In this document: one piece after another, positions 30,037 through 55,519 of the stretch
How the letters are laid out: every line of letters begins with the position of its first letter
Position numbering within the stretch: position 1 is the stretch's first letter
Assembly (NCBI GenBank): GCA_002269645.1
Contig: NIVC01000247.1
Location: forward strand, 559,095 to 623,094
Length of the DNA stretch: 64,000 bases
Direction: 5' to 3'
DNA from: Macrostomum lignano
Lineage: Eukaryota
Notes under the pieces: generated by a model
Database searches by the model: none
What the model was told of the DNA's origin: nothing
What the model saw: only the letters and a program-made list of their open reading frames with translations
Translations under genes and position numbers: made by a program

Positions 30037-30051
30037 TCCGGCACCCTGACA

Positions 30052-30500: not shown

Positions 30501-30607
30501 AAGAACTACAAGCTAGTCGTTGGTGTCAAGTCGCACCAATCTTCCTTGTCAGAGGACTTCAATCTCAAGTTTCGATGATGCAATTGCTGACACAAAAGCC
30601 AATTTCT

Positions 30608-30937
30608 GATGGTGACTGTAGGGATGGTGACTGTAGGGATGGTGACTGTAAAGATGGTGACTGTAGGGATGGTGACTGTAGGGATGGTGACTGTAGGGAT
30701 GGTGACTGTAGGGATGGTGACTGTAGGGATGGTGACTGCAAGGATGGTGACTGTAGGGATGGTGACTGTAGGGATGGTGACTGTAGGGATGGTGACTGTA
30801 GGGATGGTGACTGTAGGGATGGTGACTGCAAGGATGGTGACTGTAGGGATGGTGACTGTAGGGATGCTGACTGTAGGGATGGTGACTGTAGGGATGGTGA
30901 CTGTAGGGATGGTGACTGTAGGGATGGTGACTGTAGA
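30608..30937. repeat. 15-bp minisatellite, ~22 copies
   Basis: gatggtgactgtagg. Confidence 0.96.
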
Positions 30938-32419: not shown

Positions 32420-32915
32420 CGCCCCTGTCTCTTGCCGGGCACCCCTGTCTCTTGCCGGGTACCCCTGTCTCTTGCCGGGCACCCCTGTCTCTTGCCGGGC
32501 ACCCCTGTCTCTTGCCGGGCACCCCTGTCTCTTGCCGGGCACCCCTGTCTCTTGCCGGGCGCCCCTGTCTCTTGCCGGGCACCCCTGTCTCTTGCCGGGT
32601 ACCCCTGTCTCTTGCCGGGCAATCCTGTCTCTTGCCGGGCACCCCTGTCTCTTGCCGGGCGCCCCTGTCTCTTGCCGGGCACCCCTGTCTCTTGCCGGGC
32701 ACCCCTGTCTCTTGCCGGGCACCCCTGTCTCTTGCCGGGCGCCCCTGTCTCTTGCCGGGCACCCCTGTCTCTTGCCGGGCGCCCCTGTCTCTTGCCGGGC
32801 ATCCCTGTCTCTTGCCGGGCACCCCTGTCTCTTGTCGAGCACCCCTGTCTCTTGCCGGGCACCCCTGTCTCTTGCCGGGCATCCCTGTCTCTTGCCGGGC
32901 ACCCCTGTCTCTTGC
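32420..32915. repeat. 20-bp minisatellite GGGC(A/G)CCCCTGTCTCTTGCC, ~25 copies
   Basis: Read directly; the unit is nearly the same as the right part of the 16310-17010 array. Confidence 0.96.
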
Positions 32916-33556
32916 CACAGAGGCCGGTTGCCACCTGTTCAAAACATGAAACAGAAGGAGCGGCAGTGATGAGAGGCTTCTGCAGAAAAGCGAAAGAATT
33001 TCAATATTATTGCCGCTAAATGCACTCGCCTAATTCAACCCAGCAGACTCTCAACTGCCTGAGCTGCGCACGAGAGGAACAGGTGAAAGCATAGGAGAGT
33101 CGGGAGAGAGCCAGAGCCCTGTTGCCAGCCAGCCAATGCTCTGCAGCTGCTGCAGTTACGAAGGCCAGTGGGCAGAGTGAGAGAGAAAACTGGCCCAGTT
33201 TAGCAATGCATTTTCTGTACATTTGACCGCCTCCTCAAACCGATGCACTGCGGGACTGAGCAGCATTTTACACCGCTCAGTGGGCCATTAAATGCATTTA
33301 AAGATCTCACACTGCACTCAGGCACAATGGGTCAGCTCAGCCTCATCAAGTACACCTTGGGGTGGCCGCTGCAGCCGCAGTCTCTCCGTTGCCATGCTGG
33401 GTGCACAGAGGCAAAAGCGCTCACGCTCGGGAGAGAAGTTTCGGTTGCTGAGGCCGGGTGGTCAAGGGGTGGCCTCGCCAGAGGCTGCAAAAATGTGAGC
33501 AGCTGAGGAATGAGGCGTTAAAAATTTTCTGGCAACCCGCTGCACAAACCTTTGAA

Positions 33557-34130
33557 ACACCTGCCACTCTGACAGCAGCCGTGACTGACATCTGCCACTC
33601 TGACAGCAGCCGTGACTGACATCTTCCACTCTGACAGCAGCCGTGACTCACATCTGCCACTCTGACAGCAGCCGTGACTGACATCTTCCACTCTGACCGC
33701 AGCCGTGACTGACAATTGCCACTCTGACAGCAGCCGTGACTGACACCTGCCACTCTGACAGCAGCCGTGACTGACATCTGCCACTCTGACAGCAGCCGTG
33801 ACTGACATCTGCCACTCTGACAGCAGCCGTGACTGACATCTTCCACTCTGACAGCAGCCGTGACTGACATCTTCCACTCTGACAGCAGCCGTGACTGACA
33901 TCTGCCACTCTGACAGCAGCCGTGACTGACATCTTCCACTCTGACAGCAGCCGTGACTGACATCTGCCACTCTGACAGCAGCCGTGACTGACATCTGCCA
34001 CTCTGACAGCAGCCGTGACTCACATCTGCCACTCTGACAGCAGCCGTGACTGACATCTGCCACTCTGACAGCAGCCGTGACTGACATCTGCCACTCTGAC
34101 AGCAGCCGTGACTGACATCTGCCACTCTGA
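33557..34130. repeat. 31-bp minisatellite ending ~90 bp upstream of the ankyrin-cGLR start codon
   Basis: ctgccactctgacagcagccgtgactgacat, ~18 copies. Confidence 0.96.
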
Positions 34131-34221
34131 CATCTTGTTTCCCTCTTCCTCCCTCTTTCTCCCTTCCTCTCTCTTATTTTCTCCTACTAGACTTTTCTTA
34201 TCCATACCGCTCTCCAGAACA

Positions 34222-37200
34222 ATGGGCCAAAATCAAAGCCGACATAAGCAAGCGACCACCGAAAACATTACTGCTGCAGCACGGAAAGGTCGCTTTCAAG
34301 ACGTCAAGTTTCTCCTCTCACAAATCAATGACCAATCAAACAGGGACACCTGCTGCATCAAAGCTGCCGAAAATGCTGCAGACAATGGTCACTTTGAAAT
34401 CGTCAAGTTTCTCCTCTCACAAATCAATGACCAATCAAACAGGGACACCTGCTGCATCAAAGCTGCCGAAAAAGCTGCACTCCGTGGTCACTTTGAAATC
34501 GTCAAGTTTCTCCTCTCACAAATCAATGACCAATCAAACAGGGACACCTGCTGCATCAAAGCTGCCGAAAATGCTGCAAACAATGGTCACTTTGAAATCG
34601 TCAAGTTTCTCCTCTCACAAATCAATGACCAATCAAACAGGGACACCTGCTGCATCAAAGCTGCCGAAAATGCTGCAAACAATGGTCACTTTGAAATCGT
34701 CAAGTTTCTCCTCTCACAAATCAATGACCAATCAAACAGGGACACCTGCTGCATCAAAGCTGCCGAAAATGCTGCACTCCGTGGTCACTTTGAAATCGTC
34801 AAGTTTTTCCTGTCACAAATCAATGACCAATCAAACAGGGACACCTGCTGCATCAAAGCTGCCGAAAAGCTGCACTCCGTGGTCACTTTGAAATCGTCAA
34901 GTTTCTCCTCTCACAAATCAATGACCAATCAAACAGGGACACCTGCTGCATCAAAGCTGCCGAAAATGCTGCAAACAATGGTCACTTTGAAATCGTCAAG
35001 TTTCTCCTCTCACAAATCAATGACCAATCAAACAGGGACACCTGCTGCATCAAAGCTGCCGAAAATGCTGCAATGGTCACTTTGAAATCGTCAAGTTTCT
35101 CGTCCCACAAATCAATGACCAATCAAACAGGGACACCTGCTGCATCAAAGCTGCCGAAAATGCTGCAAACAATGGTCACTTTGAAATCGTCAAGTTTCTC
35201 CTCTCACAAATCAATGACCAATCAAACAGGGACACCTGCTGCATCAAAGCTGCCGAAAATGCTGCACTCCGTGGTCACTTTGAAATCGTCAAGTTTCTCC
35301 TCTCACAAATCAATGACCAATCAAACAGGGACACCTGCTGCATCAAAGCTGCCGAAAATGCTGCACTCCGTGGTCACTTTGAAATCGTCAAGTTTCTCCT
35401 CTCACAAATCAATGACCAATCAAACAGGGACACCTGCTGCATCAAAGCTGCCGAAAATGCTGCACTCCGTGGTCACTTTGAAATCGTCAAGTTTCTCCTC
35501 TCACAAATCAATGACCAATCAAACAGGGACACCTGCTGCATCAAAGCTGCCGAAAATGCTGCAGACAATGGTCACTTTGAAATCGTCAAGTTTCTCGTCC
35601 CACAAATCAATGACCAATCAAACAGGGACACCTGCTGCATCAAAGCTGCCGAAAAGCTGCACTCCGTGGTCACTTTGAAATCGTCAAGTTTCTCCTCTCA
35701 CAAATCAATGACCAATCAAACAGGGACACCTGCTGCATCAAAGCTGCCGAAAATGCTGCACTCCGTGGTCACTTTGAAATCGTCAAGTTTCTCCTCTCAC
35801 AAATCAATGACCAATCAAACAGGGACACCTGCTGCATCAAAGCTGCCGAAAATGCTGCAGACAATGATCACTTTGAAATCGTCAAGTTTCTCGTCCCTCA
35901 AATCAATGACCAATCAAACAGGGACACCTGCTGCATCAAAGCTGCCGAAAAAGCTGCAAAAGATGATGACTTTGAAAGCGTCAAGTTTCTCCTCTCACAA
36001 ATCAATGACCAATCAAACAGGGACACCTGCTGCATCAAAGCTGCCGAAAATGCTGCAAAGAAGGGTCACTTTGAAATCGTCAAGTTTCTCCTCTCACAAA
36101 TCAATGACCAATCAAACAGGGACACCTGCTGCATCAAAGCTGCCGAAAATGCTGCACTCCGTGGTCACTTTGAAATCGTCAAGTTTCTCCTCTCACAAAT
36201 CAATGACCAATCAAACAGGGACACCTGCTGCATCAAAGCTGCCGAAAATGCTGCACTCCGTGGTCACTTTGAAATCGTCAAGTTTCTCCTCTCACAAATC
36301 AATGACCAATCAAACAGGGACACCTGCTGCATCAAAGCTGCCGAAAATGCTGCACTCCGTGGTCACTTTGAAATCGTCAAGTTTCTCCTCTCACAAATCA
36401 ATGACCAATCAAACAGGGACACCTGCTGCATCAAAGCTGCCGAAAATGCTGCAGACAATGGTCACTTTGAAATCGTCAAGTTTCTCTCCACAAATCAATG
36501 ACCAATCAAACAGGGACACCTGCTGCATCAATGCCGCCGAAAAAGCTGCACTCCGTGGTCACTTTGAAATCGTCAAGTTTCTCCTCTCACAAATCAATGA
36601 CCAATCAAACAGGGACACCTGCTGCATCAAAGCTGCCGAAAATGCTGCACTCCGTGGTCACTTTGAAATCGTCAAGTTTCTCCTCTCACAAATCAATGAC
36701 CAATCAAACAGGGACACCTGCTGCATCAAAGCTGCCGAAAATGCTGCAGACAATGATCACTTTGAAATCGTCAAGTTTCTCGTCCCTCAAATCAATGACC
36801 AATCAAACAGGGACACCTGCTGCATCAAAGCTGCCGAAAAAGCTGCAAAAGATGATGACTTTGAAAGCGTCAAGTTTCTCCTCTCACAAATCAATGACCA
36901 ATCAAACAGGGACACCTGCTGCATCAAAGCTGCCAAAAATGCTGCAAAGAAGGGTCACTTTGAAATCGTCAAGTTTCTCCTCTCACAAATCAATGACCAA
37001 TCAAACAGGGACACCTGCTGCATCAAAGCTGCCGAAAATGCTGCACTCCGTGGTCACTTTGAAATCGTCAAGTTTCTCCTCTCACAAATCAATGACCAAT
37101 CAAACAGGGACACCTGCTGCATCAAAGCTGCCGAAAATGCTGCAGACAATGGTCACTTTGAAATCGTCAAGTTTCTCGTCCCACAAATCAATGACCAATC

Positions 37201-40200
37201 AAACAGGGACACCTGCTGCATCAAAGCTGCCGAAAAAGCTGCAAACAATGGTCACTTTGAAATCGTCAAGTTTCTCGTCCCACAAATCAATGACCAATCA
37301 AACAGGGACACCTGCTGCATCGAAGCTGCCTGCTGTCAAGTTTCTCTCGTCACAAATCAATGACCAATCAAACAGGGACACCTGCTGCATCAAAGCTGCC
37401 GAAAATGCTGCACTCCGTGGTCACTTTGAAATCGTCAAGTTTTTCCTGTCACAAATCAATGACCAATCAAACAGGGACACCTGCTGCATCAAAGCTGCCG
37501 AAAAGCTGCACTCCGTGGTCACTTTGAAATCGTCAAGTTTCTCGTCCCACAAATCAATGACCAATCAAACAGGGACACCTGCTGCATCAAAGCTGCCGAA
37601 AATGCTGCACTCCGTGGTCACTTTGAAATCGTCAAGTTTTTCCTGTCACAAATCAATGACCAATCAAACAGGGACACCTGCTGCATCAAAGCTGCCGAAA
37701 ATGCTGCACTCCGTGGTCACTTTGAAATCGTCAAGTTTCTCCTCTCACAAATCAATGACCAATCAAACAGGGACACCTGCTGCATCAAAGCTGCCGAAAA
37801 TGCTGCAGACAATGGTCACTTTGAAATCGTCAAGTTTCTCCTCTCACAAATCAATGACCAATCAAACAGGGACACCTGCTGCATCAAAGCTGCCGAAAAT
37901 GCTGCACTCCGTGGTCACTTTGAAATCGTCAAGTTTCTCCTCTCACAAATCAATGACCAATCAAACAGGGACACCTGCTGCATCAAAGCTGCCGAAAATG
38001 CTGCACTCCGTGGTCACTTTGAAATCGTCAAGTTTTCCTCTCACAAATCAATGACCAATCAAACAGGGACACCTGCTGCATCAAAGCTGCCGAAAATGCT
38101 GCACAATGGTCACTTTGAAATCGTCAAGTTTCTCCTCTCACAAATCAATGACCAATCAAACAGGGACACCTGCTGCATCAAAGCTGCCGAAAAAGCTGCA
38201 CTCCGTGGTCACTTTGAAATCGTCAAGTTTCTCCTCTCACAAATCAATGACCAATCAAACAGGGACACCTGCTGCATCAAAGCTGCCGAAAATGCTGCAA
38301 ACAATGGTCACTTTGAAATCGTCAAGTTTCTCCTCTCACAAATCAATGACCAATCAAACAGGGACACCTGCTGCATCAAAGCTGCCGAAAATGCTGCACT
38401 CCGTGGTCACTTTGAAATCGTCAAGTTTCTCCTCTCACAAATCAATGACCAATCAAACAGGGACACCTGCTGCATCAAAGCTGCCGAAGATGCTGCAATT
38501 CGTGGTCACTTTGAAATCGTCAAGTTTCTCGTCCCACAAATCAATGACCAATCAAACAGGGACACCTGCTGCATCAAAGCTGCCGAAAATGCTGCAAACA
38601 ATGGTCACTTTGAAATCGTCAAGTTTCTCCTCTCACAAATCAATGACCAATCAAACAGGGACACCTGCTGCATCAAAGCTGCCGAAAATGCTGCAAACAA
38701 TGGTCACTTTGAAATCGTCAAGTTTCTCCTCTCACAAATCAATGACCAATCAAACAGGGACACCTGCTGCATCAAAGCTGCCGAAAATGCTGCACTCCGT
38801 GGTCACTTTGAAATCGTCAAGTTTCTCCTCTCACAAATCAATGACCAATCAAACAGGGACACCTGCTGCATCAAAGCTGCCGAAAATGCTGCACTCCGTG
38901 GTCACTTTGAAATCGTCAAGTTTCTCCTCTCACAAATCAATGACCAATCAAACAGGGACACCTGCTGCATCAAAGCTGCCGAAAATGCTGCACTCCGTGG
39001 TCACTTTGAAATCGTCAAGTTTCTCGTCCCACAAATCAATGACCAATCAAACAGGGACACCTGCTGCATCAAAGCTGCCGAAAATGCTGCATGTCACTTT
39101 GAAATCGTCAAGTTTCTCCTCTCACAAATCAATGACCAATCAAACAGGGACACCTGCTGCATCAAAGCTGCCGAAAATGCTGCAAAGAAGGGTCACTTTG
39201 AAATCGTCAAGTTTCTCCTCTCACAAATCAATGACCAATCAAACAGGGACACCTGCTGCATCAAAGCTGCCGAAAATGCTGCACTCCGTGGTCACTTTGA
39301 AATCGTCAAGTTTCTCCTCTCACAAATCAATGACCAATCAAACAGGGACACCTGCTGCATCAAAGCTGCCGAAAATGCTGCAGACAATGGTCACTTTGAA
39401 ATCGTCAAGTTTCTCGTCCCACAAATCAATGACCAATCAAACAGGGACACCTGCTGCATCAAAGCCGCCGAAAAAGCTGCAAACAATGGTCACTTTGAAA
39501 TCGTCAAGTTTCTCGTCCACAAATCAATGACCAATCAAACAGGGACACCTGCTGCATCAAAGCTGCCGAAAAGCTGCAAACAATGGTCACTTTGAAATCG
39601 TCAAGTTTCTCGTCCCACAAATCAATGACCAATCAAACAGGGACACCTGCTGCATCAAAGCTGCCGAAAATGCTGCACTCCGTGGTCACTTTGAAATCGT
39701 CAAGTTTCTCCTCTCACAAATCAATGACCAATCAAACAGGGACACCTGCTGCATCAAAGCTGCCGAAAATGCTGCACTCCGTGGTCACTTTGAAATCGTC
39801 AAGTTTCTCCTCTCACAAATCAATGACCAATCAAACAGGGACACCTGCTGCATCAAAGCTGCCGAAAATGCTGCACAATGGTCACTTTGAAATCGTCAAG
39901 TTTCTCGTCCCACAAATCAATGACCAATCAAACAGGGACACCTGCTGCATCAAAGCTGCCGAAAATGCTGCACTCCGTGGTCACTTTGAAATCGTCAAGT
40001 TTCTCCTCTCACAAATCAATGACCAATCAAACAGGGACACCTGCTGCATCAAAGCTGCCGAAAATGCTGCACTCCGTGGTCACTTTGAAATCGTCAAGTT
40101 TCTCCTCTCACAAATCAATGACCAATCAAACAGGGACACCTGCTGCATCAAAGCTGCCGAAAATGCTGCAGACAATGTCACTTTGAAATCGTCAAGTTTC

Positions 40201-43200
40201 TCGTCTCAAAATCAATGACCAATCAAACAGGGACACCTGCTGCATCAAAGCTGCCGAAAAAGCTGCAAAAATGGTCACTTTGAAATCGTCAAGTTTCTCC
40301 TCTCACAAATCAATGACCAATCAAACAGGGACACCTGCTGCATCAAAGCTGCCGAAAAAGCTGCAAACAATGGTCACTTTGAAATCGTCAAGTTTCTCGT
40401 CTCACAAATCAATGACCAATCAAACAGGGACACCTGCTGCATCAAAGCTGCCGAAAATGCTGCAGACAATGGTCACTTTGAAATCGTCAAGTTTCTCCTC
40501 TCACAAATCAATGACCAATCAAACAGGGACACCTGCTGCATCAAAGCTGCCGAAAATGCTGCACTCCGTGGTCACTTTGAAATCGTCAAGTTTCTCCTCT
40601 CACAAATCAATGACCAATCAAACAGGGACACCTGCTGCATCAAAGCTGCCGAAAATGCTGCACTCCGTGGTCACTTTGAAATCGTCAAGTTTCTCCTCTC
40701 ACAAATCAATGACCAATCAAACAGGGACACCTGCTGCATCAAAGCTGCCGAAAATGCTGCACTCCGTGGTCACTTTGAAATCGTCAAGTTTCTCCTCTCA
40801 CAAATCAATGACCAATCAAACAGGGACACCTGCTGCATCAAAGCTGCCGAAAATGCTGCACAATGGTCACTTTGAAATCGTCAAGTTTCTCCTCTCACAA
40901 ATCAATGACCAATCAAACAGGGACACCTGCTGCATCAAAGCTGCCGAAAATGCTGCACTCCGTGGTCACTTTGAAATCGTCAAGTTTCTCCTCTCACAAA
41001 TCAATGACCAATCAAACAGGGACACCTGCTGCATCAAAGCTGCCGAAGATGCTGCAATTCGTGGTCACTTTGAAATCGTCAAGTTTCTCGTCCCACAAAT
41101 CAATGACCAATCAAACAGGGACACCTGCTGCATCAAAGCTGCCGAAAATGCTGCAAACAATGGTCACTTTGAAATCGTCAAGTTTCTCCTCTCACAAATC
41201 AATGACCAATCAAACAGGGACACCTGCTGCATCAAAGCTGCCGAAAATGCTGCAAACAATGGTCACTTTGAAATCGTCAAGTTTCTCCTCTCACAAATCA
41301 ATGACCAATCAAACAGGGACACCTGCTGCATCAAAGCTGCCGAAAATGCTGCACTCCGTGGTCACTTTGAAATCGTCAAGTTTCTCCTCTCACAAATCAA
41401 TGACCAATCAAACAGGGACACCTGCTGCATCAAAGCTGCCGAAAATGCTGCACTCCGTGGTCACTTTGAAATCGTCAAGTTTCTCCTCTCACAAATCAAT
41501 GACCAATCAAACAGGGACACCTGCTGCATCAAAGCTGCCGAAAATGCTGCACTCCGTGGTCACTTTGAAATCGTCAAGTTTCTCCTCTCACAAATCAATG
41601 ACCAATCAAACAGGGACACCTGCTGCATCAAAGCTGCCGAAAATGCTGCACTGTGGTCACTTTGAAATCGTCAAGTTTCTCCTCTCACAAATCAATGACC
41701 AATCAAACAGGGACACCTGCTGCATCAAAGCTGCCGAAAATGCTGCAAAGATGGTCACTTTGAAATCGTCAAGTTTCTCCTCTCACAAATCAATGACCAA
41801 TCAAACAGGGACACCTGCTGCATCAAAGCTGCCGAAAATGCTGCACTCCGTGGTCACTTTGAAATCGTCAAGTTTCTCCTCTCACAAATCAATGACCAAT
41901 CAAACAGGGACACCTGCTGCATCAAAGCTGCCGAAAATGCTGCACAATGGTCACTTTGAAATCGTCAAGTTTCTCGTCCACAAATCAATGACCAATCAAA
42001 CAGGGACACCTGCTGCATCGAAGCTGCCGAAAAAGCTGCAAACAATGGTCACTTTGAAATCGTCAAGTTTCTCGTCCCACAAATCAATGACCAATCAAAC
42101 AGGGACACCTGCTGCATCGAAGCTGCCGAAAAAGCTGCAAACAATGGTCACTTTGAAATCGTCAAGTTTCTCGTCCCACAAATCAATGACCAATCAAACA
42201 GGGACACCTGCTGCATCAAAGCTGCCGAAAATGCTGCACTCCGTGGTCACTTTGAAATCGTCAAGTTTCTCCTCTCACAAATCAATGACCAATCAAACAG
42301 GGACACCTGCTGCATCAAAGCTGCCGAAAATGCTGCACTCCGTGGTCACTTTGAAATCGTCAAGTTTCTCCTCTCACAAATCAATGACCAATCAAACAGG
42401 GACACCTGCTGCATCAAAGCTGCCGAAAATGCTGCACTGTGTCACTTTGAAATCGTCAAGTTTCTCCTCTCACAAATCAATGACCAATCAAACAGGGACA
42501 CCTGCTGCATCAAAGCTGCCGAAAATGCTGCACTGTGGTCACTTTGAAATCGTCAAGTTTCTCCTCTCACAAATCAATGACCAATCAAACAGGGACACCT
42601 GCTGCATCAAAGCTGCCGAAAATGCTGCACTCCGTGGTCACTTTGAAATCGTCAAGTTTCTCCTCTCACAAATCAATGACCAATCAAACAGGGACACCTG
42701 CTGCATCAAAGCTGCCGAAAATGCTGCACAATGGTCACTTTGAAATCGTCAAGTTTCTCGTCTCAAAATCAATGACCAATCAAACAGGGACACCTGCTGC
42801 ATCAAAGCTGCCGAAAAAGCTGCAAAAGATGATGACTTTGAAAGCGTCAAGTTTCTCCTCTCACAAATCAATGACCAATCAAACAGGGACACCTGCTGCA
42901 TCGAAGCTGCCGAAAAAGCTGCAAACAATGGTCACTTTGAAATCGTCAAGTTTCTCGTCTCACAAATCAATGACCAATCAAACAGGGACACCTGCTGCAT
43001 CAAAGCTGCCGAAAATGCTGCAGACAATGGTCACTTTGAAATCGTCAAGTTTCTCCTCTCACAAATCAATGACCAATCAAACAGGGACACCTGCTGCATC
43101 AAAGCTGCCGAAAATGCTGCACTGTGTCACTTTGAAATCGTCAAGTTTCTCCTCTCACAAATCAATGACCAATCAAACAGGGACACCTGCTGCATCAAAG

Positions 43201-46200
43201 CTGCCGAAAATGCTGCACTCCGTGGTCACTTTGAAATCGTCAAGTTTCTCCTCTCACAAATCAATGACCAATCAAACAGGGACACCTGCTGCATCAAAGC
43301 TGCCGAAAATGCTGCACTCCGTGGTCACTTTGAAATCGTCAAGTTTCTCCTCTCACAAATCAATGACCAATCAAACAGGGACACCTGCTGCATCAAAGCT
43401 GCCGAAAATGCTGCACTGTGGTCACTTTGAAATCGTCAAGTTTCTCCTCTCACAAATCAATGACCAATCAAACAGGGACACCTGCTGCATCAAAGCTGCC
43501 GAAAATGCTGCACTGTGGTCACTTTGAAATCGTCAAGTTTCTCCTCTCACAAATCAATGACCAATCAAACAGGGACACCTGCTGCATCAAAGCTGCCGAA
43601 AATGCTGCACTGTGTCACTTTGAAATCGTCAAGTTTCTCCTCTCACAAATCAATGACCAATCAAACAGGGACACCTGCTGCATCAAAGCTGCCGAAAATG
43701 CTGCACTCCGTGGTCACTTTGAAATCGTCAAGTTTCTCCTCTCACAAATCAATGACCAATCAAACAGGGACACCTGCTGCATCAAAGCTGCCGAAAAAGC
43801 TGCACTCCGTGGTCACTTTGAAATCGTCAAGTTTCTCGTCCCACAAATCAATGACCAATCAAACAGGGACACCTGCTGCATCAAAGCTGCCGAAAATGCT
43901 GCACTCCGTGGTCACTTTGAAATCGTCAAGTTTCTCGTCCCACAAATCAATGACCAATCAAACAGGGACACCTGCTGCATCAAAGCTGCCGAAAATGCTG
44001 CAGACAATGATCACTTTGAAATCGTCAAGTTTCTCGTCCCTCAAATCAATGACCAATCAAACAGGGACACCTGCTGCATCAAAGCTGCCAAAAATGCTGC
44101 AGACAATGGTCACTTTGAAGTCGTTGATTTTCTTTTTTCGTGTCTCTCAAGTCCCGATAAGAGAGCGAATCTCCGTTTCCAATGCGCAGTCGCAGCTTGC
44201 TCTCGTCTTCACGAAAATTTCGTTGCCTCCCTGAGCCTCGAGCCCGACTGGCTCTTTCAATCCAGCACCATCCTCAGCTTCATTGCAGCAATGGCCATCG
44301 AAGGCAGCAACTCTGTTCTCACCGACACCCTCTCTCGAATGCAGCCAGATCAAATCACACAGCTGCTCTGTCTCTCCATCTCTCAAAGACACGTCGCTGC
44401 TGCCGCCACACTGCTCAATCATAAGCGATTCAGCACACAGCATGTCGATCTCCCAGACGACAACACCGGAGCCACCGCTCTCATGCTCGCAGCTGATGCA
44501 GGTCATCACGAACTCATTCACAAACTCATCGATCTCGGCGCCTCACTGCACGCTCAAGACACTCACGGTCGCACTGCTCTGTCACGAGCCTGCCAAGCCG
44601 GTCACGTGCGAGCAGCCAAGACTCTCATCGACAATGGAGCCGATGCCAGCCATCGAGACAATCAGGGCCTCACGTGTGCGCATCTCGCACAGCGATTTGA
44701 GCAGCGGCAGGTGCTGCGGCTGCTAAATCCCACCGAGTCAGTTGCCATTTGTTGTCATTAGTTGCAATTCTACTTGCAATCACTTCGCTACTTTACCTCG
44801 CTTTCCTTCACGCATTCCAGAATAACACAGCACCTACAGCCAGCCGCTCACCGCCTCCATCCGTGAGTCTGACCGCTTTCATTCCCCATTTCCTTCTTTG
44901 GGTGGAGCTTGGGCCACTCAGCAAATCCGCCTCCACTCACTCCACTCTCACCTCTCCCCAGACTCTGGGACCACTCCGAGCAGGACCGCCGTCTAAGCAG
45001 GGAGCTGCATCGACTGCTCAGCGATGCGGGATTCACCGAGCAGAGAGCAAAGTGTCAGCAGAGACTGGCTGACTGGCTGCAACAAGTCGCTCGAGTCCTC
45101 ACACAGGATGGCAGGCAGATGACGGGCAGCTACGCAGAGGGCTGGGCCAACAGTCTGGTGCAAGTGAACGGCAGGACAGCTGCAGACTCGGACATTGACT
45201 GGACTGTGCTGGTTGCTGGGCAAGAGTTCCATCTGGAAGGTGGCTGTGAACAGAAGAGTTGGCGTGATTCCTGCAAAGACGCCACTCCGCTGCAGGTCAA
45301 GGAGGGCCACGCACAGGTGGCAGTCGGAGCAGGTCAGTGAGGCTGGGTTCTTCATCCCAATCCCCATGCCAATCCAAGACTCTTAAATCTGCTCAATTAT
45401 TTATTGGATACCGAGTGGCTGAATTTCTGAGTTCATAAGTTCAACATGAGTTCGAAACCTTGTTGAAATACCATGCAGCACTCATTTCGCTTGAAATACA
45501 AATTGTGGCAACTAATCACTCCGATCGCACCTATCTCATAGGTTATGAAACAATTATTATGCAATTTCAGGCACATACATTATAAGCATGCATACAGTAC
45601 GCAATACGTGAAAACCTGATCTGAATGAAAGTAAAATAATTGTCTCTTTACCTAACCATCATCAACTCCGTTGCGGTGCCCCTGCAAGCATTGCAACGAA
45701 TTATTGATTGCAGTAGTAGCACTGACACATGAGAAGAACGAACTCAACTAACACATTCAGGCAGTTTCAACCAACCCATCTTTTCCACTCGCCACAAAGC
45801 GACTCTCCGCTCACTGCGCTCTGCAGGCAGCCAACCTGCAGTGACAGCCACGGCGTGCGGTGTGCGGCCTGCACAGGACACGTGCCATGCGATCGAGTGC
45901 TGCAGCAGTTTCTGTAAGGACAGGATTGAAAAACTGGTTGGATACAGTGGTTTTGTTCACCTCGTTCGGGCGACCAGACCGAGCTCGACCAACGAGCTCA
46001 GAGTGAGCTTCAGCTTCCTAGAGAAACACATCATGAGACGGCTGAGCACAGTCCAGGGCCAGTTGTTCACACTCATCAAGTTCATCTTCAAGAGACACTT
46101 GCCGCTCACTCTGGCCACACCTGGACTCAAGACCTACCATGCAAAGACTCTACTATTCTTCATGCTGGAGAAGCATGGCACAGATCCTAAAACTGAGGCT

Positions 46201-47304
46201 TGGCAGCCCCACAATCTGATCGCTCTGCTCAAGGAGTCTCTCGACATGATGCTGAGCTTCATCGACTCAAGCAGCAGCTCGCCCGATGAGTGCATGCCGC
46301 ACTTCTTCATGCTCAACGCTCCGCTCTACTTCAAGAACGCTGGAATCGGCGGCGACTTTGACAACACGAAGGCGAGGATTCGAGACCGACTTTGTGAGCT
46401 GAGAAGCGACATCGGCGGAGTGGTCGAGCAGCTGAGGAGACTCGTGAGACCTCTGCAGTCAGAGAAGTTCTATTTTCACCCGTTCACTCTGCTGCCTCTG
46501 ACAGCGCCGCCTGCTGTCACGAAGATCAGGGAAGGAAGTGATCGCTATCCAACAATGTACTACAAGTTCGCAGACGTGTACAGTGTGGTGCACCAGTGTG
46601 TGAGCGAGCTGCAGTCGGAATCGAGAGACAGAGACACCCTGATGAGGCAGCTCAGTCTCCTGCATGAGCTGCAGTGGTGCAAGTGCGCCGCCCTGTGCAT
46701 GACCGCCATGGCGCATTTGAAGTTCGGAGAATCTGAGGAGGCTGATAGACTCGCGATGGAGCTGCAGAGACATCAGGTTGAGTCAGGGTTGAAGCCAAAT
46801 GATATTCGAAAAGAGAGCTACATTACAAAACTGCCAGAAGACTCAGACTGGGCGTGGAGGTTCTGCCTCCCCTGCGACTCTCCGCCTCGCTTCCCATTCC
46901 TTCCCGAGTTCACGCAGACTCTGTTCACAGCCAGACTGTCGCAGCCTCTCTCCTCCCACCTGTACGTAAACTTCCGCTGCCTGAGCTGGAGTCTCCAAGC
47001 TGAGCTGCTCCGCAATCGCGCACCTGCAATCGCATTCGATCATTGGATTGAACAGCTGCTTGGAGACCCGGACTTGGAGGAGCTGCTCACTCTGGCTCAC
47101 TACAGCGACTGCCGCGAGCACGTGGAGCTCAGCCTGCAGCAGATGGAGATGATCGAGAAAGAGAGACGCGTCGCCATGGAGACGCAGGACGAGGAGAAGA
47201 TCGGCTGGGTCAGGCAGAAGCTGGAGAGACTTGATGCAGCAGCTGGAGTCCTCAAAGTCGAGTCGCAAAGTGGAGGTCGGAAAATGAAGGCTGAGTCAGA
47301 CTGA
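34222..47304 (+). CDS. Ankyrin-array + Mab-21/cGAS-like nucleotidyltransferase (cGLR-like) gene; predicted exons 34222-44736, 44821-44862, 44962-45332 and 45827-47304; exon 1 has many frameshifts as assembled
   Basis: ATG at 34222 (MGQNQS). All three introns are GT-AG (donors GTCAGT, GTGAGT, GTCAGT) with compatible phases 2/2/1. NTase motifs: GSYAEG...SDIDWTVLV, QDTCHAIEC, LRVSFSFLEK, LKTYHAKTLLFFMLE, CMPHFF. Confidence 0.85.
34303..44122 (+). repeat. Coding tandem array of ~99 copies of a 99-bp (33-aa) ankyrin-type repeat
   Basis: Unit DTCCIKAAENAAxxGHFEIVKFLLSQINDQSNR; AAxxGHxEIVxxLL is the ankyrin core. Array length of ~9.8 kb divided by 99 bp gives the copy estimate. Confidence 0.95.
44440..44730 (+). 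CDS. Canonical ankyrin repeats (about 3) at the end of exon 1
   Basis: DNTGATALMLAADAGHHELIHKLIDLGA, DTHGRTALSRACQAGHVRAAKTLIDNGAD, DNQGLTCAHLA. Confidence 0.93.
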
Positions 47305-47414: not shown

Positions 47415-47655
47415 GAAAACACCTATACATGCTGTTGGATTGTCTGTACATGCTGTTGGATTGTCTCTACATGCTGTTGGATTGTCTGTACATGCTGTTG
47501 GATTGTCTCTACATGCTGTTGGATTGTCTGTACATGCTGTTGGATTGTCTCTTCATGCTGTTGGATTGTCTCTTCATGCTGTTGGATTGTCTCTTCATGC
47601 TGTTGGATTGTCTCTTCATGCTGTTGGATTGTCTGTACATGCTGTGGGATTGTCT
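47415..47655. repeat. 21-bp minisatellite, ~11 copies
   Basis: catgctgttggattgtct(gta/cta/ctt). Confidence 0.94.
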
Positions 47656-47724
47656 CTAAGAACCTGCTCTCAGAATGAGCTCAATCAGTCAGCAAGTTGA
47701 TTTCATGTACTTTAATCATGTAGT

Positions 47725-47870
47725 CATGAACATTCAGTGACTGACAGCCTGACATCTCCCTCATGAACAGTCAGTGACTGACAGCCTGACAGCTCCCTCA
47801 TGAACATTCAGTGACTGACAGCCTGACAGCTCCCTCATGAACATTCAGTGACTGACAGCCTGACAGCTCC
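47725..47870. repeat. 37-bp tandem repeat, ~4 copies
   Basis: catgaacattcagtgactgacagcctgacagctccct. Confidence 0.9.
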
Positions 47871-48519
47871 CCAGTGTGCATCAAGTACAATTCCATTATT
47901 TTATTTATTGCTGTTTCGTATTGGCCAAAATACTTCGTAGATATATGATAAAATTCCCCAGTCTGTAATTCAGTATTTCAGCTGTCTTTGGTAAAATACG
48001 CTTGTACTGCACTTATTTAACCATGCTTGCTTGCTTTTTCCAGTCTGCAAATAAATTTGAAAATGAATTCTCCAGCTCACCCTTTGTGTTCTCTGCCCCA
48101 CAATGCTGCCTTGAAAGTGTCGCCTGATGAAGAATGACTTTTGAGTTAAAAATCAAAATTCCTGAAAAACGAGAATCCTACCGGGAATCCCGTGCAAGAC
48201 CCTAAAATTTATCATTAACGAAATCCCTGAAGACAAAAATAAAAGTACATAAAAGGCTGCAAGGCCACAATAACATCAAAGGTCAGCCGGCACCTCCTCA
48301 GCCAGCAGGCAGTCGCAGAATCGCCGGTGGTTGCCTGCAGCGCCAGCAGCGGCACCTCCTGAACTTCCGGCTGTGGGTGGCCGCTCGGCTCTGCAGCATC
48401 TGCAGTGCAGCAGCCGCCTCAGCCTGCGGTTCGAGCGACTCCGCCAGCGTCCGGGTCTCGGCGTTGCATGGAGCTGCGCCGCCCTCTGACGGTCAGGCAG
48501 GGCCTGCAGGACCGCCCGC

Positions 48520-49050
48520 ACACAGCCAAAGGCAGCCCTCACACAGCCAAATGCAGCCCTCACACAGTCAAATGCAGCCCTCACACAGCCAAATGCAGCC
48601 CTCACACAGCGTCAGGCAGCCCTCACACAGTCAAAGGCAGCCCTCACACAGCCAAATGCAGCCCTCACACAGCGACAGGCAGCCCTCACACAGCCAAAGG
48701 CAGCCCTCACACAGCGTCAGGCAGCCCTCACACAGTCAAAGGCAGCCCTCACACAGCCAAAGGCAGCCCTCACACAGCCAAAGGCAGCCCTCACACAGCG
48801 ACAGGCAGCCCTCACACAGCCAAAGGCAGCCCTCACACAGCGACAGGCAGCCCTCACACAGCCAAAGGCAGCCATCACACAGCCACAGGCAGCCCTCACA
48901 CAGCCAAAGGCAGCCCTCACACAGCCAAAGGCAGCCATCACACAGCCACAGGCAGCCCTCACACAGCCAAATGCAGCCCTCACACAGCGACAGGCAGCCA
49001 TCACACAGCCAAAGACAGCCCACACACAGCCAAACACAGCCTGACACAGC
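48520..49050. repeat. 21-bp minisatellite, ~25 copies
   Basis: cacacagccaaaggcagccct and variants. Confidence 0.95.
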
Positions 49051-49259
49051 CAAAGAAACGCAGAGGAAAGAACACTGCATAGATAATCAATCAAACAAAT
49101 GAATCTCCCAGCTCAATTTATTTAGTCTAAACCGCTTTCTAGGAAACAAAGCTTTCTAGGAAACCAAGCTTTCTAGGAAATATGCGCAAAAATATACGCT
49201 TGTACAAATCTTTTGAGACTTTTTAACTTTCAGCTTTAAATGGTTATCTCTAGATCATG

Positions 49260-49545
49260 ACTGACTCATCTGTATTAGCGCCACTGACTCATCTGCAATT
49301 GGTGCCACTGACTCATCTGCAATTGGTGCCACTGACTCATCTGTATTAGCGCCACTGACTCATCTGCAATTGGTGCCACTGACTCATCTGCAATTGGTGC
49401 CACTGACTCATCTGTATTAGCGCCACTGACTCATCTGCAATTGGTGCCACTGACTCATCTGCAATTGGTGCCACTGACTCATCTGCAATTGGTGCCACTG
49501 ACTCATCTGCAATTGGTGCCACTGACTCATCTGTATTGGCGCCAT
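49260..49545. repeat. 24-bp minisatellite, ~12 copies, each containing TGACTCA
   Basis: actgactcatctgcaattggtgcc and actgactcatctgtattagcgcc. Confidence 0.94.
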
Positions 49546-49740
49546 CTCATCCCACACGCTATCTGATCCCACACTATCTGATCTCACACCCTATCTGATC
49601 CCACACCTTATTTGATCCCACACCCTATCTGATTCCACACTATCTGATCTCACACCTTATCTGATCCCACACCCTATCTGATCCCACACTATCTGATCCC
49701 ACACCTTATCTGATCCCACACCCTATCTCATCCCACAGAT
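49545..49740. repeat. 19-20-bp minisatellite, ~10 copies
   Basis: ctatctgatcccacac(c). Confidence 0.9.
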
Positions 49741-49849
49741 AGGGTGTGAGTGTTCCTGGGAAAGTCCAGATGCTTAGATATATATTAAGCTTATCACTTT
49801 TTATAGAACAGGCCTACTAACTTTCTTAGTAGTGAAGACGTACAGAATC

Positions 49850-51630
49850 GGACAGAATTACCTTGACTTTGCTCCCAATTAGGACAGAATTACCTTGACT
49901 TTGCTCCCAATTAGGACAGAATTACCTTGACTTTGCTCCCAATTAGGACAGAATTACCTTGACTTTGCTCCCAATTAGGACAGAATTACCTTGACTTTGC
50001 TCCCAATTAGGACAGAATTACCTTGATTTTGCTTCCAACTATATAGATAGACTGTAAAAAATTAACCCGCAGTGACACGCACTAATCCAACGGAGACCAT
50101 CACTGACCTAATCCAAGTGTCGATCAGTGACCCGCTTAATGGCAAATGATCTTCACTGACCCGAACTAATCCAAGTGGCCTTCAGTAACAGGCATTAATC
50201 CAAGTGGCCTTTAGTGAACCGCACTAATCCAACAGTGACAATCACTGACCCGCACTAATCCAATTGACCATCAGTGACCCGCACTAATCCAAGTGACCAT
50301 CAGTGACCCGCACTAATCCAACAGTGACAATCACTGTCCCGCACTAATCCAAGTTACTATCAGTGACCCGCACTAATCCAAGTGGCCTTCAGTGACCGGC
50401 ACTAATCCAAGTGAACTTTAGTGAATCGCACTAATCTACGTGACTCAGTTACTGGACAAAATTACCTGAAATTTGCTCCCCACTACACAGATCTGGAGGC
50501 CGGACAGAATTACCTGAAATTTGCTCCCCACTACACAGATCTGGAGGCCGGACAGAATTACCTGAAATTTGCTCCCCACTACACAGATCTGGAGGCCGGA
50601 CAGAATTACCTGAAATTTGCTCCCCACTACACAAATCTGGAGGCCGGACAGAATTACCTGAAATTTGCTCCCCACTACACAGATCTGGAGGCCGGACAGA
50701 ATTACCTGAAATTTGCTCCCCACTACACAAATCTGGAGGCCGGACAGAATTACCTGAAATTTGCTCCCCACTACACAAATCTGGAGGCCGGACACAATTA
50801 CCTGAAATTTGCTCCCCACTACACAAATCTGGAGGCCGGACAGAATTACCTGAAATTTGCTCCCCACTACACAGATCTGGAGGCCGGACAGAATTACCTG
50901 AAATTTGCTCCCCACTACACAGATTTGGAGGCCGAACAGAATTACCTGAAATTTGCTCCCCACTACACAAATCTGGAGGCCGGACAGAATTACCTGAAAT
51001 TTGCTCATTACTACACAGATCTGGAGGCCGGACAGAATTACCTGAAATTTGCTCCCCACTACACAGATCTGGAGGCCGGACAGAATTACCTGAAATTTGC
51101 TCCCCACTACACAGATCTGGAGGCCGGACAGAATTACCTGAAATTTGCTCCCCACTACACAAATCTGGAGGCCGGACAGAATTACCTGAAATTTGCTCCC
51201 CACTACACAGATCTGGAGGCCGGACAGAATTACCTGAAATTTGCTCCCCACTACACAAATCTGGAGGCCGGACAGAATTACCTGAATTTTGCTCCCCACT
51301 ACAGTAGAAGGCATGAGGGGGCTTCTGGGACAAAATTTTTCACCTCCTCCATAATCCCATTAAATCCATCCATATTATCCCCGACAGAATCAGAAAAAAA
51401 GGGGGGGTCGCCCTTGCTCCGAAAACATCCTCCATAATCCCATTAAATCCATCCATATTATCCCTGACAGAATCAGAAAAAAAGGGGGGTCGCACTCGCT
51501 CACAAAACATCGTCCATAATCCACCTAAATCCATCCATATTATCCCTGACAGAATCATGAAAAAGTGGAGGGGTCGCACTTGTTCTGAAAACTTCGAACA
51601 TAATCCTATTAAATCCATCCATATTACCCC
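49850..51630. repeat. Putative left terminal region with four tandem arrays: 32 bp x6 (49850-50040), ~29 bp (50070-50440), 48 bp x~18 (50454-51303) and ~83 bp x4 (51350-51630)
   Basis: The 32-bp and 48-bp units share GGACAGAATTACC..TTTGCTCCC; the 83-bp unit contains GACAGAATC. Confidence 0.9.
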
Positions 51631-52076: not shown

Positions 52077-52080
52077 TTTC

Positions 52081-52951: not shown

Positions 52952-52971
52952 TTTTTTCACAAAAAAAATAT

Positions 52972-55503: not shown

Positions 55504-55519
55504 TTTATTTCAAGTAAAA

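What the first reader, a model, noticed from the sequence alone, without database searches (positions are those of the whole stretch)
34303..44122. Natural DARPin-like code: variation is focused on the dipeptide before GH in each repeat
Seen: the 99-bp units are almost invariant, including at synonymous sites, except AA[xx]G/D = LR, NN, DN, KK, IR or KD, a linked EN/EK/ED/KN site, and LLSQ/LVPQ/LVSQ. The first repeats read DN, LR, NN, NN, LR. Established: these xx positions correspond to ankyrin positions 13-14, two of the surface positions randomised in designed DARPins. Inference: the order of variants encodes ligand specificity, analogous to TALE RVDs or lamprey VLR modules, and could be reshuffled by unequal crossover.
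Basis: partly seen in the sequence, partly recalled or inferred. Interest (0 to 1): 0.88.

Follow-up and report, generated by a model that had tools for sequence, protein, structure and literature searches.

The report
Hypervariable ankyrin array in flatworm gene
A flatworm (Macrostomum) gene that joins ankyrin repeats to a cGAS-like enzyme domain carries about 100 near-identical 33-residue repeats that differ mainly at two surface residues, a pattern already known from fungal immune receptors; as assembled the array is broken by 19 frameshifts, and nothing shows that repeat order is a code.

Summary
There are 100 copies of a 99-bp unit at 34288-44124. Among the 74 clean units, 79 of 99 columns are invariant, and 58% of all pairwise differences fall in the two codons before GH (ankyrin positions 13/14). 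Positions 10, 24 and 25 vary less.

The array is exon 1 of a four-exon gene (34222-47304). The gene belongs to a large family seen only in Macrostomum lignano: N-terminal atypical ankyrin repeats, canonical ankyrin repeats, a cGAS/Mab-21-like nucleotidyltransferase, and in some members a caspase domain. Related loci carry 3.4 and about 29 units. In the 29-unit arrays positions 13/14 are again the most variable, with other residues.

Repeated multi-unit blocks point to growth by unequal crossing-over. All length changes are deletions, and they sit in or beside columns that differ between units. I read this as consensus error in the assembly, but a pseudogene is not excluded.

The closest precedent is the "highly internally conserved" ankyrin, TPR and WD repeats of fungal NLRs. 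No evidence supports a TALE-like positional code. I score it as a new variant of a known kind, of moderate interest.

The parts
33557..34132 (.). 31-bp minisatellite just upstream of the gene. The same array lies upstream of the related loci.
   Evidence: TRF. The same unit is found at L003 9562-9950, L004 5397-5971 and L005 4789-5363. Alignment to L003 is 96-98% identical.
34136..34190 (+). Polypyrimidine tract ending in AG, about 30 nt before the ATG. Possibly a cis- or trans-splice acceptor (inferred).
   Evidence: Read directly from the sequence. SL trans-splicing is reported in M. lignano (PMC8629364, title and abstract).
34222..34323 (+). Start codon and N-terminal cap: MGQNQSRHKQATTENITAAARKGRFQDVKFLLSQ. 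MGxxxS fits an N-myristoylation consensus (inferred).
   Evidence: It is homologous to the annotated start of P0126, MGQNQSRHQQ, whose CDS starts at L003 10001.
34288..44124 (+). Array of 100 copies of a 99-bp (33-codon) atypical ankyrin unit, consensus INDQSNRDTCCIKAAENAALRGHFEIVKFLLSQ. Codons 13/14 are hypervariable; codons 6, 10, 24 and 25 vary less.
   Evidence: Pfam Ank_2. AF2 and Foldseek.
34819..43650 (+). 25 shortened units. The 19 that shift the frame start at 34819, 35016, 35606, 36397, 37286 (70 bp), 37455, 37949, 38047, 39425, 39523, 39819, 40114, 40211, 40804, 41594, 41691, 42476, 43359 and 43456. The six that keep the frame start at 39035, 41888, 42380, 42672, 43065 and 43553.
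   Evidence: All are deletions. 22 of 24 can be derived by dropping only columns that are polymorphic among units; random sets of 20 columns explain 7.5 on average.
38301..39025 (+). Largest exact internal duplicate, 725 bp or about 7 units, repeated at 40860-41584. It is evidence of multi-unit block duplication.
   Evidence: The repeated variant blocks are LLLDLLdkKL x2 and LINNLLL x2.
44125..44736 (+). C-terminal cap (FLFSCLSSPDKRANLRFQCAVAAC), a helical linker and 2-3 canonical ankyrin repeats. Exon 1 ends here, followed by the donor GTCAGT.
44821..44862 (+). Micro-exon 2 (ITQHLQPAAHRLHP), with AG and GT boundaries.
   Evidence: compared with P0126 and P0001.
44962..45332 (+). Exon 3, the start of the nucleotidyltransferase core, with GSYAEGW and DSDIDW (GS and DxD motifs).
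   Evidence: tblastn against paralogues. Motif conservation is 26-28 of 29 family members.
45827..47304 (+). Exon 4: the third conserved Asp (RPAQDTC), the Mab-21_C domain and a C-terminal helical domain, ending at the stop codon.
   Evidence: Pfam PF20266, 25.5-26.1 bits against a cut-off of 24.1. 89-92% identical to M. lignano paralogues. The AF2 model of paralogue P0125 matches cGAS, MAB21L1 and MB21D2.

Best explanation
This is the repeat-bearing first exon of a gene from a large family found only in Macrostomum lignano. The family architecture is an N-terminal MGxxxS, atypical ankyrin repeats, canonical ankyrin repeats, a cGAS/Mab-21-like nucleotidyltransferase, and in some paralogues a caspase domain.

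Shown:
- In this copy one 99-bp unit lineage has been amplified to about 100 copies.
- Related loci with the same flanking minisatellites carry 3.4 and about 29 units.
- The array contains exact multi-unit duplicates.
- Differences between units are concentrated on ankyrin positions 13/14, then 10, 24/25 and 6.
- Positions 13/14 are also the most variable codons in the 29-unit arrays, and position 13 is the most variable in a sample of the family's repeats.

Inferred, step one: the array grows and is homogenised by unequal crossing-over and gene conversion, which keeps units identical even at synonymous sites. Positions 6, 10, 13 and 14 are spaced i, i+4, i+7/8 on the long helix, so they form one polar stripe, away from the Ala/Cys packing face. 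They probably form a fast-evolving binding surface of a sensor or regulatory domain coupled to the nucleotidyltransferase. [quoted passage not shown]

Inferred, step two: the 25 deletions, 19 of them frame-breaking, are mostly consensus or polishing errors made where reads from different units were mixed. The true gene may therefore be open, but the assembled copy number and variant order are not reliable in detail.

The order of variants is a by-product of block duplication, not a demonstrated code.
For: Gene and family:
- All close homologues are M. lignano proteins with Ank and Mab-21_C domains.
- An exhaustive search finds 180 clusters (98 at E<=1e-10). All ten clusters I looked up are M. 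lignano, and two are caspase fusions.
- The four exons have GT-AG boundaries, and about 2.5 kb of coding sequence after the array is intact.
- The paralogue model matches the cGAS fold at E 4e-6, and the GS, DxD and D motifs are conserved.

Repeat fold: Pfam Ank_2 4e-68, AF2 pLDDT 97.8, DARPin and ankyrin matches.

Focusing of variation. It replicates in L004 and L005 and in 58 family repeats.

Unequal crossing-over: a 725-bp exact duplicate, non-random variant order, and 3.4, 29 and 100 units at related loci.

Deletions as artefacts:
- There are 25 deletions and no insertions.
- All lie in the variable patches, and 22 of 24 equal a dropped polymorphic column. Examples are CTC[C/G]TC[T/C]CACAA to CTCTCCACAA and GAAAA[T/A]GC to GAAAAGC.
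- The frame-breaking ACAATGGT sits where the intact DN unit is expected in the LLLDLL motif, on five different backgrounds. It recurs in L004 and L005.
- L005 carries hybrid variants where its close counterpart L004 (97-98% identical flanks) has clean ones.
- The public M. lignano assembly is Canu on PacBio CLR reads, polished with Pilon (PMC5730564).

Precedent: PMC4986451.
Against: - As assembled there is no open frame through the array, and the ATG frame differs from the frame of the downstream exons even after summing the deletions (80 nt lost).
- I have no reads, transcripts or peptides for this locus, and no protein in the databases contains a long array of this unit.
- The assembly this window comes from is unknown. 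If it was built from accurate reads, the frameshifts are real.
- The crude N:S count shows no excess of non-synonymous change (17:7, p = 0.88).
- About 100 ankyrin repeats is far more than in characterised ankyrin domains (24-29 repeats, from my own knowledge).
- Solvent exposure of positions 13/14 could not be computed, because the tool returns no coordinates.
- The closest paralogue works with only 3-4 repeats, so the expansion may be neutral or harmful.
Confidence: 0.55

Rival explanations
1. Dead coding minisatellite. The frameshifts are real, and this copy is a pseudogene whose ankyrin exon expanded as one more of the many minisatellites in this genome. The variation at positions 13/14 is a relic of a few founder units mixed by recombination and has no present function.
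For: - There are 19 frame changes and one 29-bp deletion.
- The window holds more than 20 other minisatellite arrays. Simple and tandem repeats make up 15% of the M. lignano genome (PMC5730564).
- The closest intact paralogue has only 3-4 repeats.
- There is no excess of non-synonymous variants.
- The variable sites are partly linked, as expected for two unit lineages that recombine: LR/IR-type against other dipeptides by L24/V24, p = 0.019.
Against: - Real decay should scatter indels and substitutions along the unit. Here 79 columns are invariant and every deletion lies in the variable patches, with no insertion.
- The same frame-breaking variant recurs on different backgrounds and in other arrays.
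- The start codon, caps, splice sites and about 2.5 kb of downstream coding sequence are intact. A very recent inactivation would also leave them intact.
Confidence: 0.3
2. Each repeat's dipeptide reads one element of a ligand, so the order of variants is a specificity code like TALE RVDs or assembled VLR modules.
For: - The units are near-identical with a hypervariable di-residue at positions 13/14, formally like TALE residues 12/13.
- The same hot positions occur in the related arrays, with other residues.
- Copy number differs among related loci.
Against: - The variants are few and unevenly used: 46 of 99 units are LR-type, and there are six main types.
- The order is built from duplicated blocks.
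- Ankyrin domains bind through a surface spanning several repeats, not one repeat per ligand unit (my own knowledge).
- Positions 2, 3, 5 and 33 are invariant, and no beta-hairpin is predicted.
- The array cannot be translated as assembled.
- No nucleic-acid-binding features or partner are known, and somatic assembly has no support.
Confidence: 0.05
3. Assembly artefact in size and order. A real but much shorter array (tens of units, as in L004 and L005) was inflated or scrambled by the assembler, so the figure of 100 units and the variant order carry no biological information.
For: - The deletions look like mixed read pile-ups.
- The contig behind L002 (gene model P0020) starts inside an array, and the models P0122 and P0129 are annotated as partial and begin inside the arrays.
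- L004 and L005 have 97-98% identical flanks, yet their arrays differ by many indels.
- Arrays of this kind are hard to reconstruct (PMC12222747).
Against: - The array has structured, non-periodic content with unique junctions at both ends and several distinct block types.
- Long-read assemblers more often collapse such arrays than expand them (my own knowledge).
- This rival overlaps the best explanation rather than excluding it.
Confidence: 0.25

Closest known systems
Highly internally conserved (HIC) ANK, TPR and WD40 repeats of fungal NOD-like receptors (Podospora HET-E/HET-D/NWD; Dyrka et al. 2014, PMC4986451; Ament-Velasquez et al. 2025, PMC12222747)
   Same: Both are tandem repeats more than 85% identical within one gene. 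In both, variation is confined to a few positions on the helices of the predicted binding face, repeat number varies, evolution is concerted through unequal exchange, and the repeats act as a sensor domain attached to a signalling or effector domain. Both are hard to assemble.
   Different: - This is an animal, not a fungus.
- The partner domain is a cGAS/Mab-21-like nucleotidyltransferase (with a caspase in some members), not NACHT or NB-ARC.
- The array has about 100 units, against 7 to more than 16 ANK repeats per allele in Podospora and 21 in the largest fungal case reported.
- Positive selection was not shown here.
- Only related loci and near-identical copies could be compared, not alleles.
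- The repeat lacks the beta-hairpin.
PRDM9 and other KRAB-type C2H2 zinc-finger arrays (coding minisatellites)
   Same: Both are animal coding minisatellites (84-bp against 99-bp units). In both, units are near-identical even at synonymous sites, variation is focused on ligand-contacting residues, and evolution runs by unequal crossing-over and gene conversion (my own knowledge; see also bioRxiv 10.1101/2020.12.11.422147, listed).
   Different: Zinc fingers read DNA triplets, so their order really is a code, and positive selection and allelic diversity are documented for them. None of this is shown here.
TALE repeats (Xanthomonas) with RVD residues 12/13
   Same: Both have 33-35-residue helical repeats that are near-identical at the DNA level, with a hypervariable di-residue at the end of the first helix.
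   Different: TALEs wrap DNA, one repeat per base, in arrays of about 15-30 repeats. The fold is different and the proteins are bacterial effectors. Here there is no evidence for per-repeat recognition or for nucleic-acid binding.
Designed ankyrin repeat proteins (DARPins)
   Same: DARPins are the best structural matches to the model (Foldseek E about 3e-8, TM 0.6). Positions 13/14 are two of the six positions randomised in DARPins (2, 3, 5, 13, 14, 33; Binz et al. 2003, from my own knowledge). The randomised positions lie in the beta-turn and helix 1 (PMC4308713).
   Different: DARPins are man-made and have 2-3 internal repeats. Here positions 2, 3, 5 and 33 never vary, the TPLH motif and the beta-hairpin are absent, and helix 1 is extended to 17-18 residues.
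Animal cGAS-like receptors (cGLRs) and Mab-21 proteins
   Same: The C-terminal half has a Mab-21_C domain and, in a paralogue model, a cGAS-like nucleotidyltransferase fold with GS, DxD and D motifs.
   Different: Sequence similarity is very low: there is no PDB hit by sequence and the Pfam Mab-21 core is not detected. The N-terminal hypervariable ankyrin arrays and the caspase fusions did not turn up in my literature searches. Enzyme activity and product are unknown.

Membership tests
Ankyrin repeat (Pfam clan Ank) | Significant match to the ANK profile HMMs | tested here: met
   A collapsed gene model scores Ank_2 4.2e-68 (226 bits, cut-off 27.3) and Ank_4 2.8e-41.
Ankyrin repeat (Pfam clan Ank) | 33-residue helix-turn-helix units stacked into a solenoid that resembles solved ANK domains | tested here: met
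   The AF2 model has pLDDT 97.8 and pTM 0.92, with two helices per 33 residues. Top Foldseek hits are DARPins, FEM1C, AnkB and ankyrin-1 at E 3e-8 to 1e-6 and TM 0.56-0.63.
Ankyrin repeat (Pfam clan Ank) | Canonical TPLH motif and a beta-hairpin or loop finger between repeats | tested here: not met
   The unit reads DTCCIKAAE where DxxGxTPLH is expected. The model extends helix 1 over positions 30-14 and shows no strand. This is an atypical subtype.
Highly internally conserved (HIC) sensor repeats as defined for fungal NLRs (PMC4986451) | More than 85% identity between repeats over at least 100 residues | tested here: met
   Mean pairwise nucleotide identity is 95.9% over 74 clean units. TRF gives 95-96% matches over 9.8 kb.
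Highly internally conserved (HIC) sensor repeats as defined for fungal NLRs (PMC4986451) | Variation confined to a few positions on the predicted interaction surface | tested here: inconclusive
   The focusing is clear. Positions 6, 10, 13 and 14 fall on one polar stripe of helix 1 by helical periodicity. Surface exposure could not be computed, because no coordinates are returned.
Highly internally conserved (HIC) sensor repeats as defined for fungal NLRs (PMC4986451) | Positive diversifying selection at the hypervariable codons | tested here: inconclusive
   A crude count gives 17 non-synonymous to 7 synonymous variants, against 79% expected, p = 0.88. No recombination-aware codon model could be run.
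Highly internally conserved (HIC) sensor repeats as defined for fungal NLRs (PMC4986451) | Repeat-number polymorphism between alleles | not testable with these tools
   Only related loci and near-identical copies could be compared: 3.4, about 28-29 (two copies) and about 100 units. No population or read data are available.
Highly internally conserved (HIC) sensor repeats as defined for fungal NLRs (PMC4986451) | Attachment to a NOD (NACHT or NB-ARC) domain | tested here: not met
   Pfam finds only Ank and Mab-21_C in the gene. It is therefore not an NLR, only analogous to one.
TALE-like repeat code | Near-identical tandem repeats with a hypervariable di-residue | tested here: met
TALE-like repeat code | One repeat recognises one unit of a linear ligand, so order determines specificity | not testable with these tools
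   No ligand is known. The indirect evidence is against it: few variant types, unevenly used, in an order generated by block duplication.
cGAS/Mab-21 nucleotidyltransferase superfamily (cGLR-like) | Mab-21 profile match | tested here: met
   PF20266 Mab-21_C scores 25.5-26.1 bits against a cut-off of 24.1. The match is marginal, and the Mab-21 core family is not detected.
cGAS/Mab-21 nucleotidyltransferase superfamily (cGLR-like) | cGAS-like bilobed nucleotidyltransferase fold | tested here: met
   This was tested on paralogue P0125 (88% identical to the window's Mab-21 part). AF2 gives pLDDT 78. Foldseek matches cGAS at E 3.7e-6 and TMt about 0.5, and also MAB21L1 and MB21D2.
cGAS/Mab-21 nucleotidyltransferase superfamily (cGLR-like) | Catalytic GS motif and acidic triad | tested here: inconclusive
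   GS, DxD and a downstream D are conserved in 26-28 of 29 family members and are present in the window. Their assignment to the cGAS catalytic residues rests on motif order and strand position only.
cGAS/Mab-21 nucleotidyltransferase superfamily (cGLR-like) | Synthesis of a nucleotide second messenger on ligand binding | not testable with these tools
   This needs biochemistry.
Lamprey VLR-type assembled receptors | LRR modules copied somatically from flanking cassettes into an incomplete germline gene | tested here: not met
   The repeats are ankyrin, not LRR. The germline locus holds a contiguous array with start, caps and downstream exons. No cassette arrangement is seen in the window.

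The most novel reading that the evidence does not exclude
Macrostomum has evolved, independently of fungal NLRs, a germline receptor family of about 100 sequence clusters. In this reading, highly internally conserved ankyrin arrays with a hypervariable helix-1 stripe (positions 6, 10, 13, 14) act as rapidly reshuffling recognition surfaces. They are coupled to a cGAS-like nucleotidyltransferase, and in some members to a caspase. Unequal crossing-over creates locus- and individual-specific sensors for immunity or allorecognition. The 100-unit array would be an open, expressed extreme of this system.
Probability: 0.2. Interest if true: 0.85.

Novelty: new variant of a known kind. Interest (0 to 1): 0.58.

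Why it matters
Two things would follow if the arrays are real and expressed. An animal would use the same evolutionary device as fungal NLRs and PRDM9: a coding minisatellite homogenised by unequal exchange while its contact residues diversify. Here the device would sit on an ankyrin scaffold joined to a cGAS-like signalling enzyme. That would add a new architecture to animal innate-immune receptor candidates, and a natural counterpart to DARPin libraries.

M. lignano has transgenesis (PMC5730564), so the idea could be tested there.

There is also a practical point. These arrays are badly represented in the M. lignano assembly examined here. Gene models start after the arrays or inside them, so the family is under-annotated.

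Tried and rejected
- Bacterial or phage reading: rejected. The window holds a LINE element, rhodopsin-type GPCR ORFs, GT-AG introns and a Maverick/Polinton-like element, and every close homologue is from M. lignano.
- Non-coding satellite unrelated to a gene: rejected. The array is framed by a start codon with an N-cap and by a C-cap continuous with intact downstream exons. Note that two of the three plus-strand frames of the consensus unit are open, so ORF length alone says little.
- dN/dS-type count: it gave no signal. Too few independent events and frequent recombination make it weak either way.
- Deletions at polymorphic columns: the permissive derivation test also lets 16 of 24 units be explained by deleting invariant columns, because neighbouring free columns absorb the shift. 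Only the comparison with random or shifted column sets is informative.
- Sequence search of the Mab-21 part against the PDB found nothing relevant, and Pfam did not detect the nucleotidyltransferase core. The fold assignment therefore rests on an AF2 model of a paralogue.
- Protein search for long arrays of this unit: the best hit has only 8 full units. Short-read assemblies could not hold such arrays anyway.
- Literature searches on Macrostomum with ankyrin, and on cGLR with ankyrin or flatworm, found no description of this family.
- Solvent accessibility of positions 13/14 could not be computed, because model coordinates are not returned.
- The third homologue search, the Rfam tools and the viral, plasmid and E. 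coli collections were not used, as they do not bear on the question.

Full report
**1. What is in the sequence**

The window is eukaryotic. It holds a LINE-type element, two rhodopsin-type GPCR ORFs, more than 20 minisatellites and a Maverick/Polinton-like element.

TRF reports a 99-bp array over 34288-44124 with 95-96% matches. A 36-nt invariant core occurs 100 times. The consensus unit translates to INDQSNRDTCCIKAAENAALRGHFEIVKFLLSQ. A collapsed model of the gene matches Pfam Ank_2 at 4e-68.

Among the 74 units of exactly 99 bp, 79 nucleotide columns never vary. Entropy peaks at ankyrin positions 13 (1.74 bits) and 14 (1.35). Positions 10, 24 and 25 follow at 0.70-0.81 bits, and the rest are at or below 0.41. 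The six nucleotides of codons 13/14 hold 58% of all pairwise differences. A 39-nt invariant run has P = 0.0003, and six adjacent variable columns P = 0.003.

**2.

Twenty-five of the 99 unit spacings are shorter than 99 bp, and none is longer. Nineteen change the reading frame. The longest stop-free stretch in exon 1 is 779 aa, and a second plus-strand frame of the unit happens to be open.

Every deletion lies inside the variable patches. Several are exactly what results when the columns that differ between units are dropped:
- GAAAA[T/A]GC becomes GAAAAGC.
- CTC[C/G]TC[T/C]CACAA becomes CTCTCCACAA.
- [C/T]TCCTC becomes TCCTC.

Twenty-two of the 24 short units can be derived by deleting only polymorphic columns. 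Random sets of 20 columns explain 7.5 on average.

The commonest frame-breaking form, ACAATGGT, sits where an intact DN unit (AGACAATGGT) is expected in the recurring LLLDLL motif. It occurs on five different backgrounds and recurs in two other arrays.

I read this as the signature of consensus or polishing errors, made where reads from different units were piled together. The public M. lignano assembly Mlig_3_7 was built with Canu from PacBio CLR reads and polished with Pilon (PMC5730564). Its related arrays show still more indels, and hybrid variants too. I do not know which assembly the window comes from, so real frameshifts, meaning a pseudogene, remain possible.

**3. What gene it is**

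An ATG at 34222 follows a polypyrimidine tract ending in AG and opens MGQNQSRHKQ..., which then runs into the array. After the last unit come a cap (FLFSCLSSPDKRANLRFQCAVAAC), a helical linker and 2-3 canonical ankyrin repeats.

Comparison with paralogues gives four exons with GT-AG boundaries: 34222-44736, 44821-44862, 44962-45332 and 45827-47304. Exons 3 and 4 carry GSYAEGW, DSDIDW, RPAQDTC and a Mab-21_C domain.

All close homologues are Macrostomum lignano proteins with Ank and Mab-21_C domains, at up to 89% identity. An exhaustive profile-free search finds 180 clusters, 98 of them at E<=1e-10. All ten clusters I looked up are M. lignano, and two are annotated as caspase fusions.

An AF2 model of the Mab-21 half of paralogue P0125 (pLDDT 78) matches cGAS, MAB21L1 and MB21D2. 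The GS, DxD and D motifs are conserved in 26-28 of 29 members.

The gene is therefore a member of a lineage-specific family that joins ankyrin repeats to a cGAS-like nucleotidyltransferase. The organism is M. lignano or a very close relative.

**4. Structure of the repeat**

AF2 on nine clean units (38144-39034, with an alignment of family and general ANK proteins) gives pLDDT 97.8 and pTM 0.92. Each unit has a 17-18-residue helix (positions 30 to 13/14), the GH turn and a 9-residue helix (positions 17-25). There is no beta-hairpin. The best PDB matches are DARPins, FEM1C, AnkB and ankyrin-1, at TM about 0.6.

The TPLH and hairpin part of the usual binding surface is missing, and DARPin positions 2, 3, 5 and 33 are invariant.

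By helical periodicity, the variable positions 6, 10, 13 and 14 lie on one polar stripe. C3, C4, A7, A8, A11 and A12 form the packing face.

**5. Relatives of the array**

Three Mlig_3_7 loci share the upstream 31-bp minisatellite and the gene:
- L003 (the P0126 locus) is 90-97% identical to the window in the flanks and has 3.4 units at 86% identity. A Maverick-like element is inserted in an intron there.
- L004 and L005 (P0122 and P0129) are 97-98% identical to each other. That is close to the 1.9-2.4% SNP divergence reported between M. lignano subgenomes (PMC10733133). They have 29.4 and 28.3 units.

In both of the latter arrays the most variable codons are again 13 and 14, followed in differing order by 10, 23, 25, 32 and 6. 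Their dipeptides are different: DN, VK, DH, IF, NN and NY.

In a sample of 58 repeats from across the family, position 13 ranks first in entropy. Positions 25, 10 and 14 rank 4th, 5th and 7th. Positions 26, 31, 28 and 2 are also variable there, although they are frozen in the window's array.

The focusing on 13/14 is therefore a repeatable property of these arrays and not an accident of this one.

**6. How the array evolves**

Exact internal duplicates reach 725 bp (38301-39025 = 40860-41584). The variant string has far fewer distinct k-grams than shuffles do (P <= 0.006 for k = 3-6), with blocks such as LLLDLLdkKL and LINNLLL repeated. The variable sites are partly linked: LR/IR-type against other dipeptides by L24/V24 gives p = 0.019.

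Together with the 3.4, 29 and 100 unit counts, this points to unequal crossing-over and gene conversion. These processes amplify and homogenise units and carry a few unit lineages along.

A crude N:S count shows no excess of non-synonymous change (17:7). Diversifying selection is thus not demonstrated, although the clustering of four differences in 6 nt between otherwise identical LR and NN units is not what uniform mutation would give.

**7. Comparison with what is known**

[quoted passage not shown] They show more than 85% internal identity, repeat-number polymorphism, concerted evolution and hypervariable positions on the concave helices (PMC4986451). They are known to be hard to assemble (PMC12222747). 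That study found such repeats in only 0.8% of metazoan repeat proteins.

PRDM9-type zinc-finger minisatellites and TALE repeats are further analogues, but in those the order is a true code.

Here the partner domain, the animal host, the hairpin-less repeat and the extreme copy number are different. A NOD domain is absent, so this gene is analogous to an NLR and is not one.

**8. Verdict**

The DARPin-position mapping and the unequal-crossover idea are supported. The "order encodes specificity" idea is not.

The 100-unit array is either an open gene obscured by assembly errors, which I favour slightly, or a recently dead, runaway coding minisatellite.

Novelty: a new variant of a known kind. 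Interest: moderate, and higher if spanning reads and transcripts show that the arrays are intact and expressed.

Noticed in passing
window 51288-64000 (runs off the end); L003 11862-28588: A Maverick/Polinton-like element with a double-jelly-roll capsid ORF (52972-54258, minus strand), an A32-like packaging ATPase (56214-57014) and a protein-primed DNA polymerase B (58901-61927, minus strand). A copy 95-96% identical lies between the exons of the paralogous ANK-Mab21 gene P0126, so the element was recently mobile.
   Followed up: partly
window 3731-9222 and 24481-25197: A non-LTR (LINE-type) retrotransposon with endonuclease, reverse transcriptase and RNase H ORFs, and a second C-terminal fragment of a related element.
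   Followed up: no
window 14755-15588 and 23015-23848: Two rhodopsin-family GPCR ORFs whose products are almost identical over about 250 residues. This implies a local duplication of about 8.3 kb.
   Followed up: no
window 11849-12986, 16305-16996, 17923-19140, 29169-30936, 32422-32916, 33557-34132, 47426-51643: A very high density of minisatellites (periods 15-82 bp, up to 50 copies). Several are conserved in position around the related loci (31-bp, 15-bp, 21-bp, 17-bp and 37-bp units in L001 and L003-L005).
   Followed up: partly
P0160, P0161 (M. lignano proteins PAA59752.1, PAA93319.1): Some family members add a caspase p20 domain after the Mab-21 part. P0161 also starts with MGNQNS and has about 30 divergent atypical repeats. 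A sensor-NTase-protease architecture suggests a role in cell death or immunity.
   Followed up: partly
L001 8723-9848 (NIVC01001976.1); L002 1-363 (NIVC01001007.1): Another paralogue has 11 units at 87% identity with three frameshifts, each at a poly-A run, and its gene model P0006 starts only after the array. The contig behind L002 begins inside an array. Annotation of the family is systematically truncated.
   Followed up: partly
window 37286-37356: One unit carries a 29-bp internal deletion (70-bp spacing) that joins GCTGCC directly to TGCTGTCAAGTTT. It is the only length change larger than 6 bp.
   Followed up: no
window 54289-55503: An ORF inside the Maverick-like element has a long Gln/Pro-rich tract (QQPQQ repeats) and no informative domain match.
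   Followed up: no
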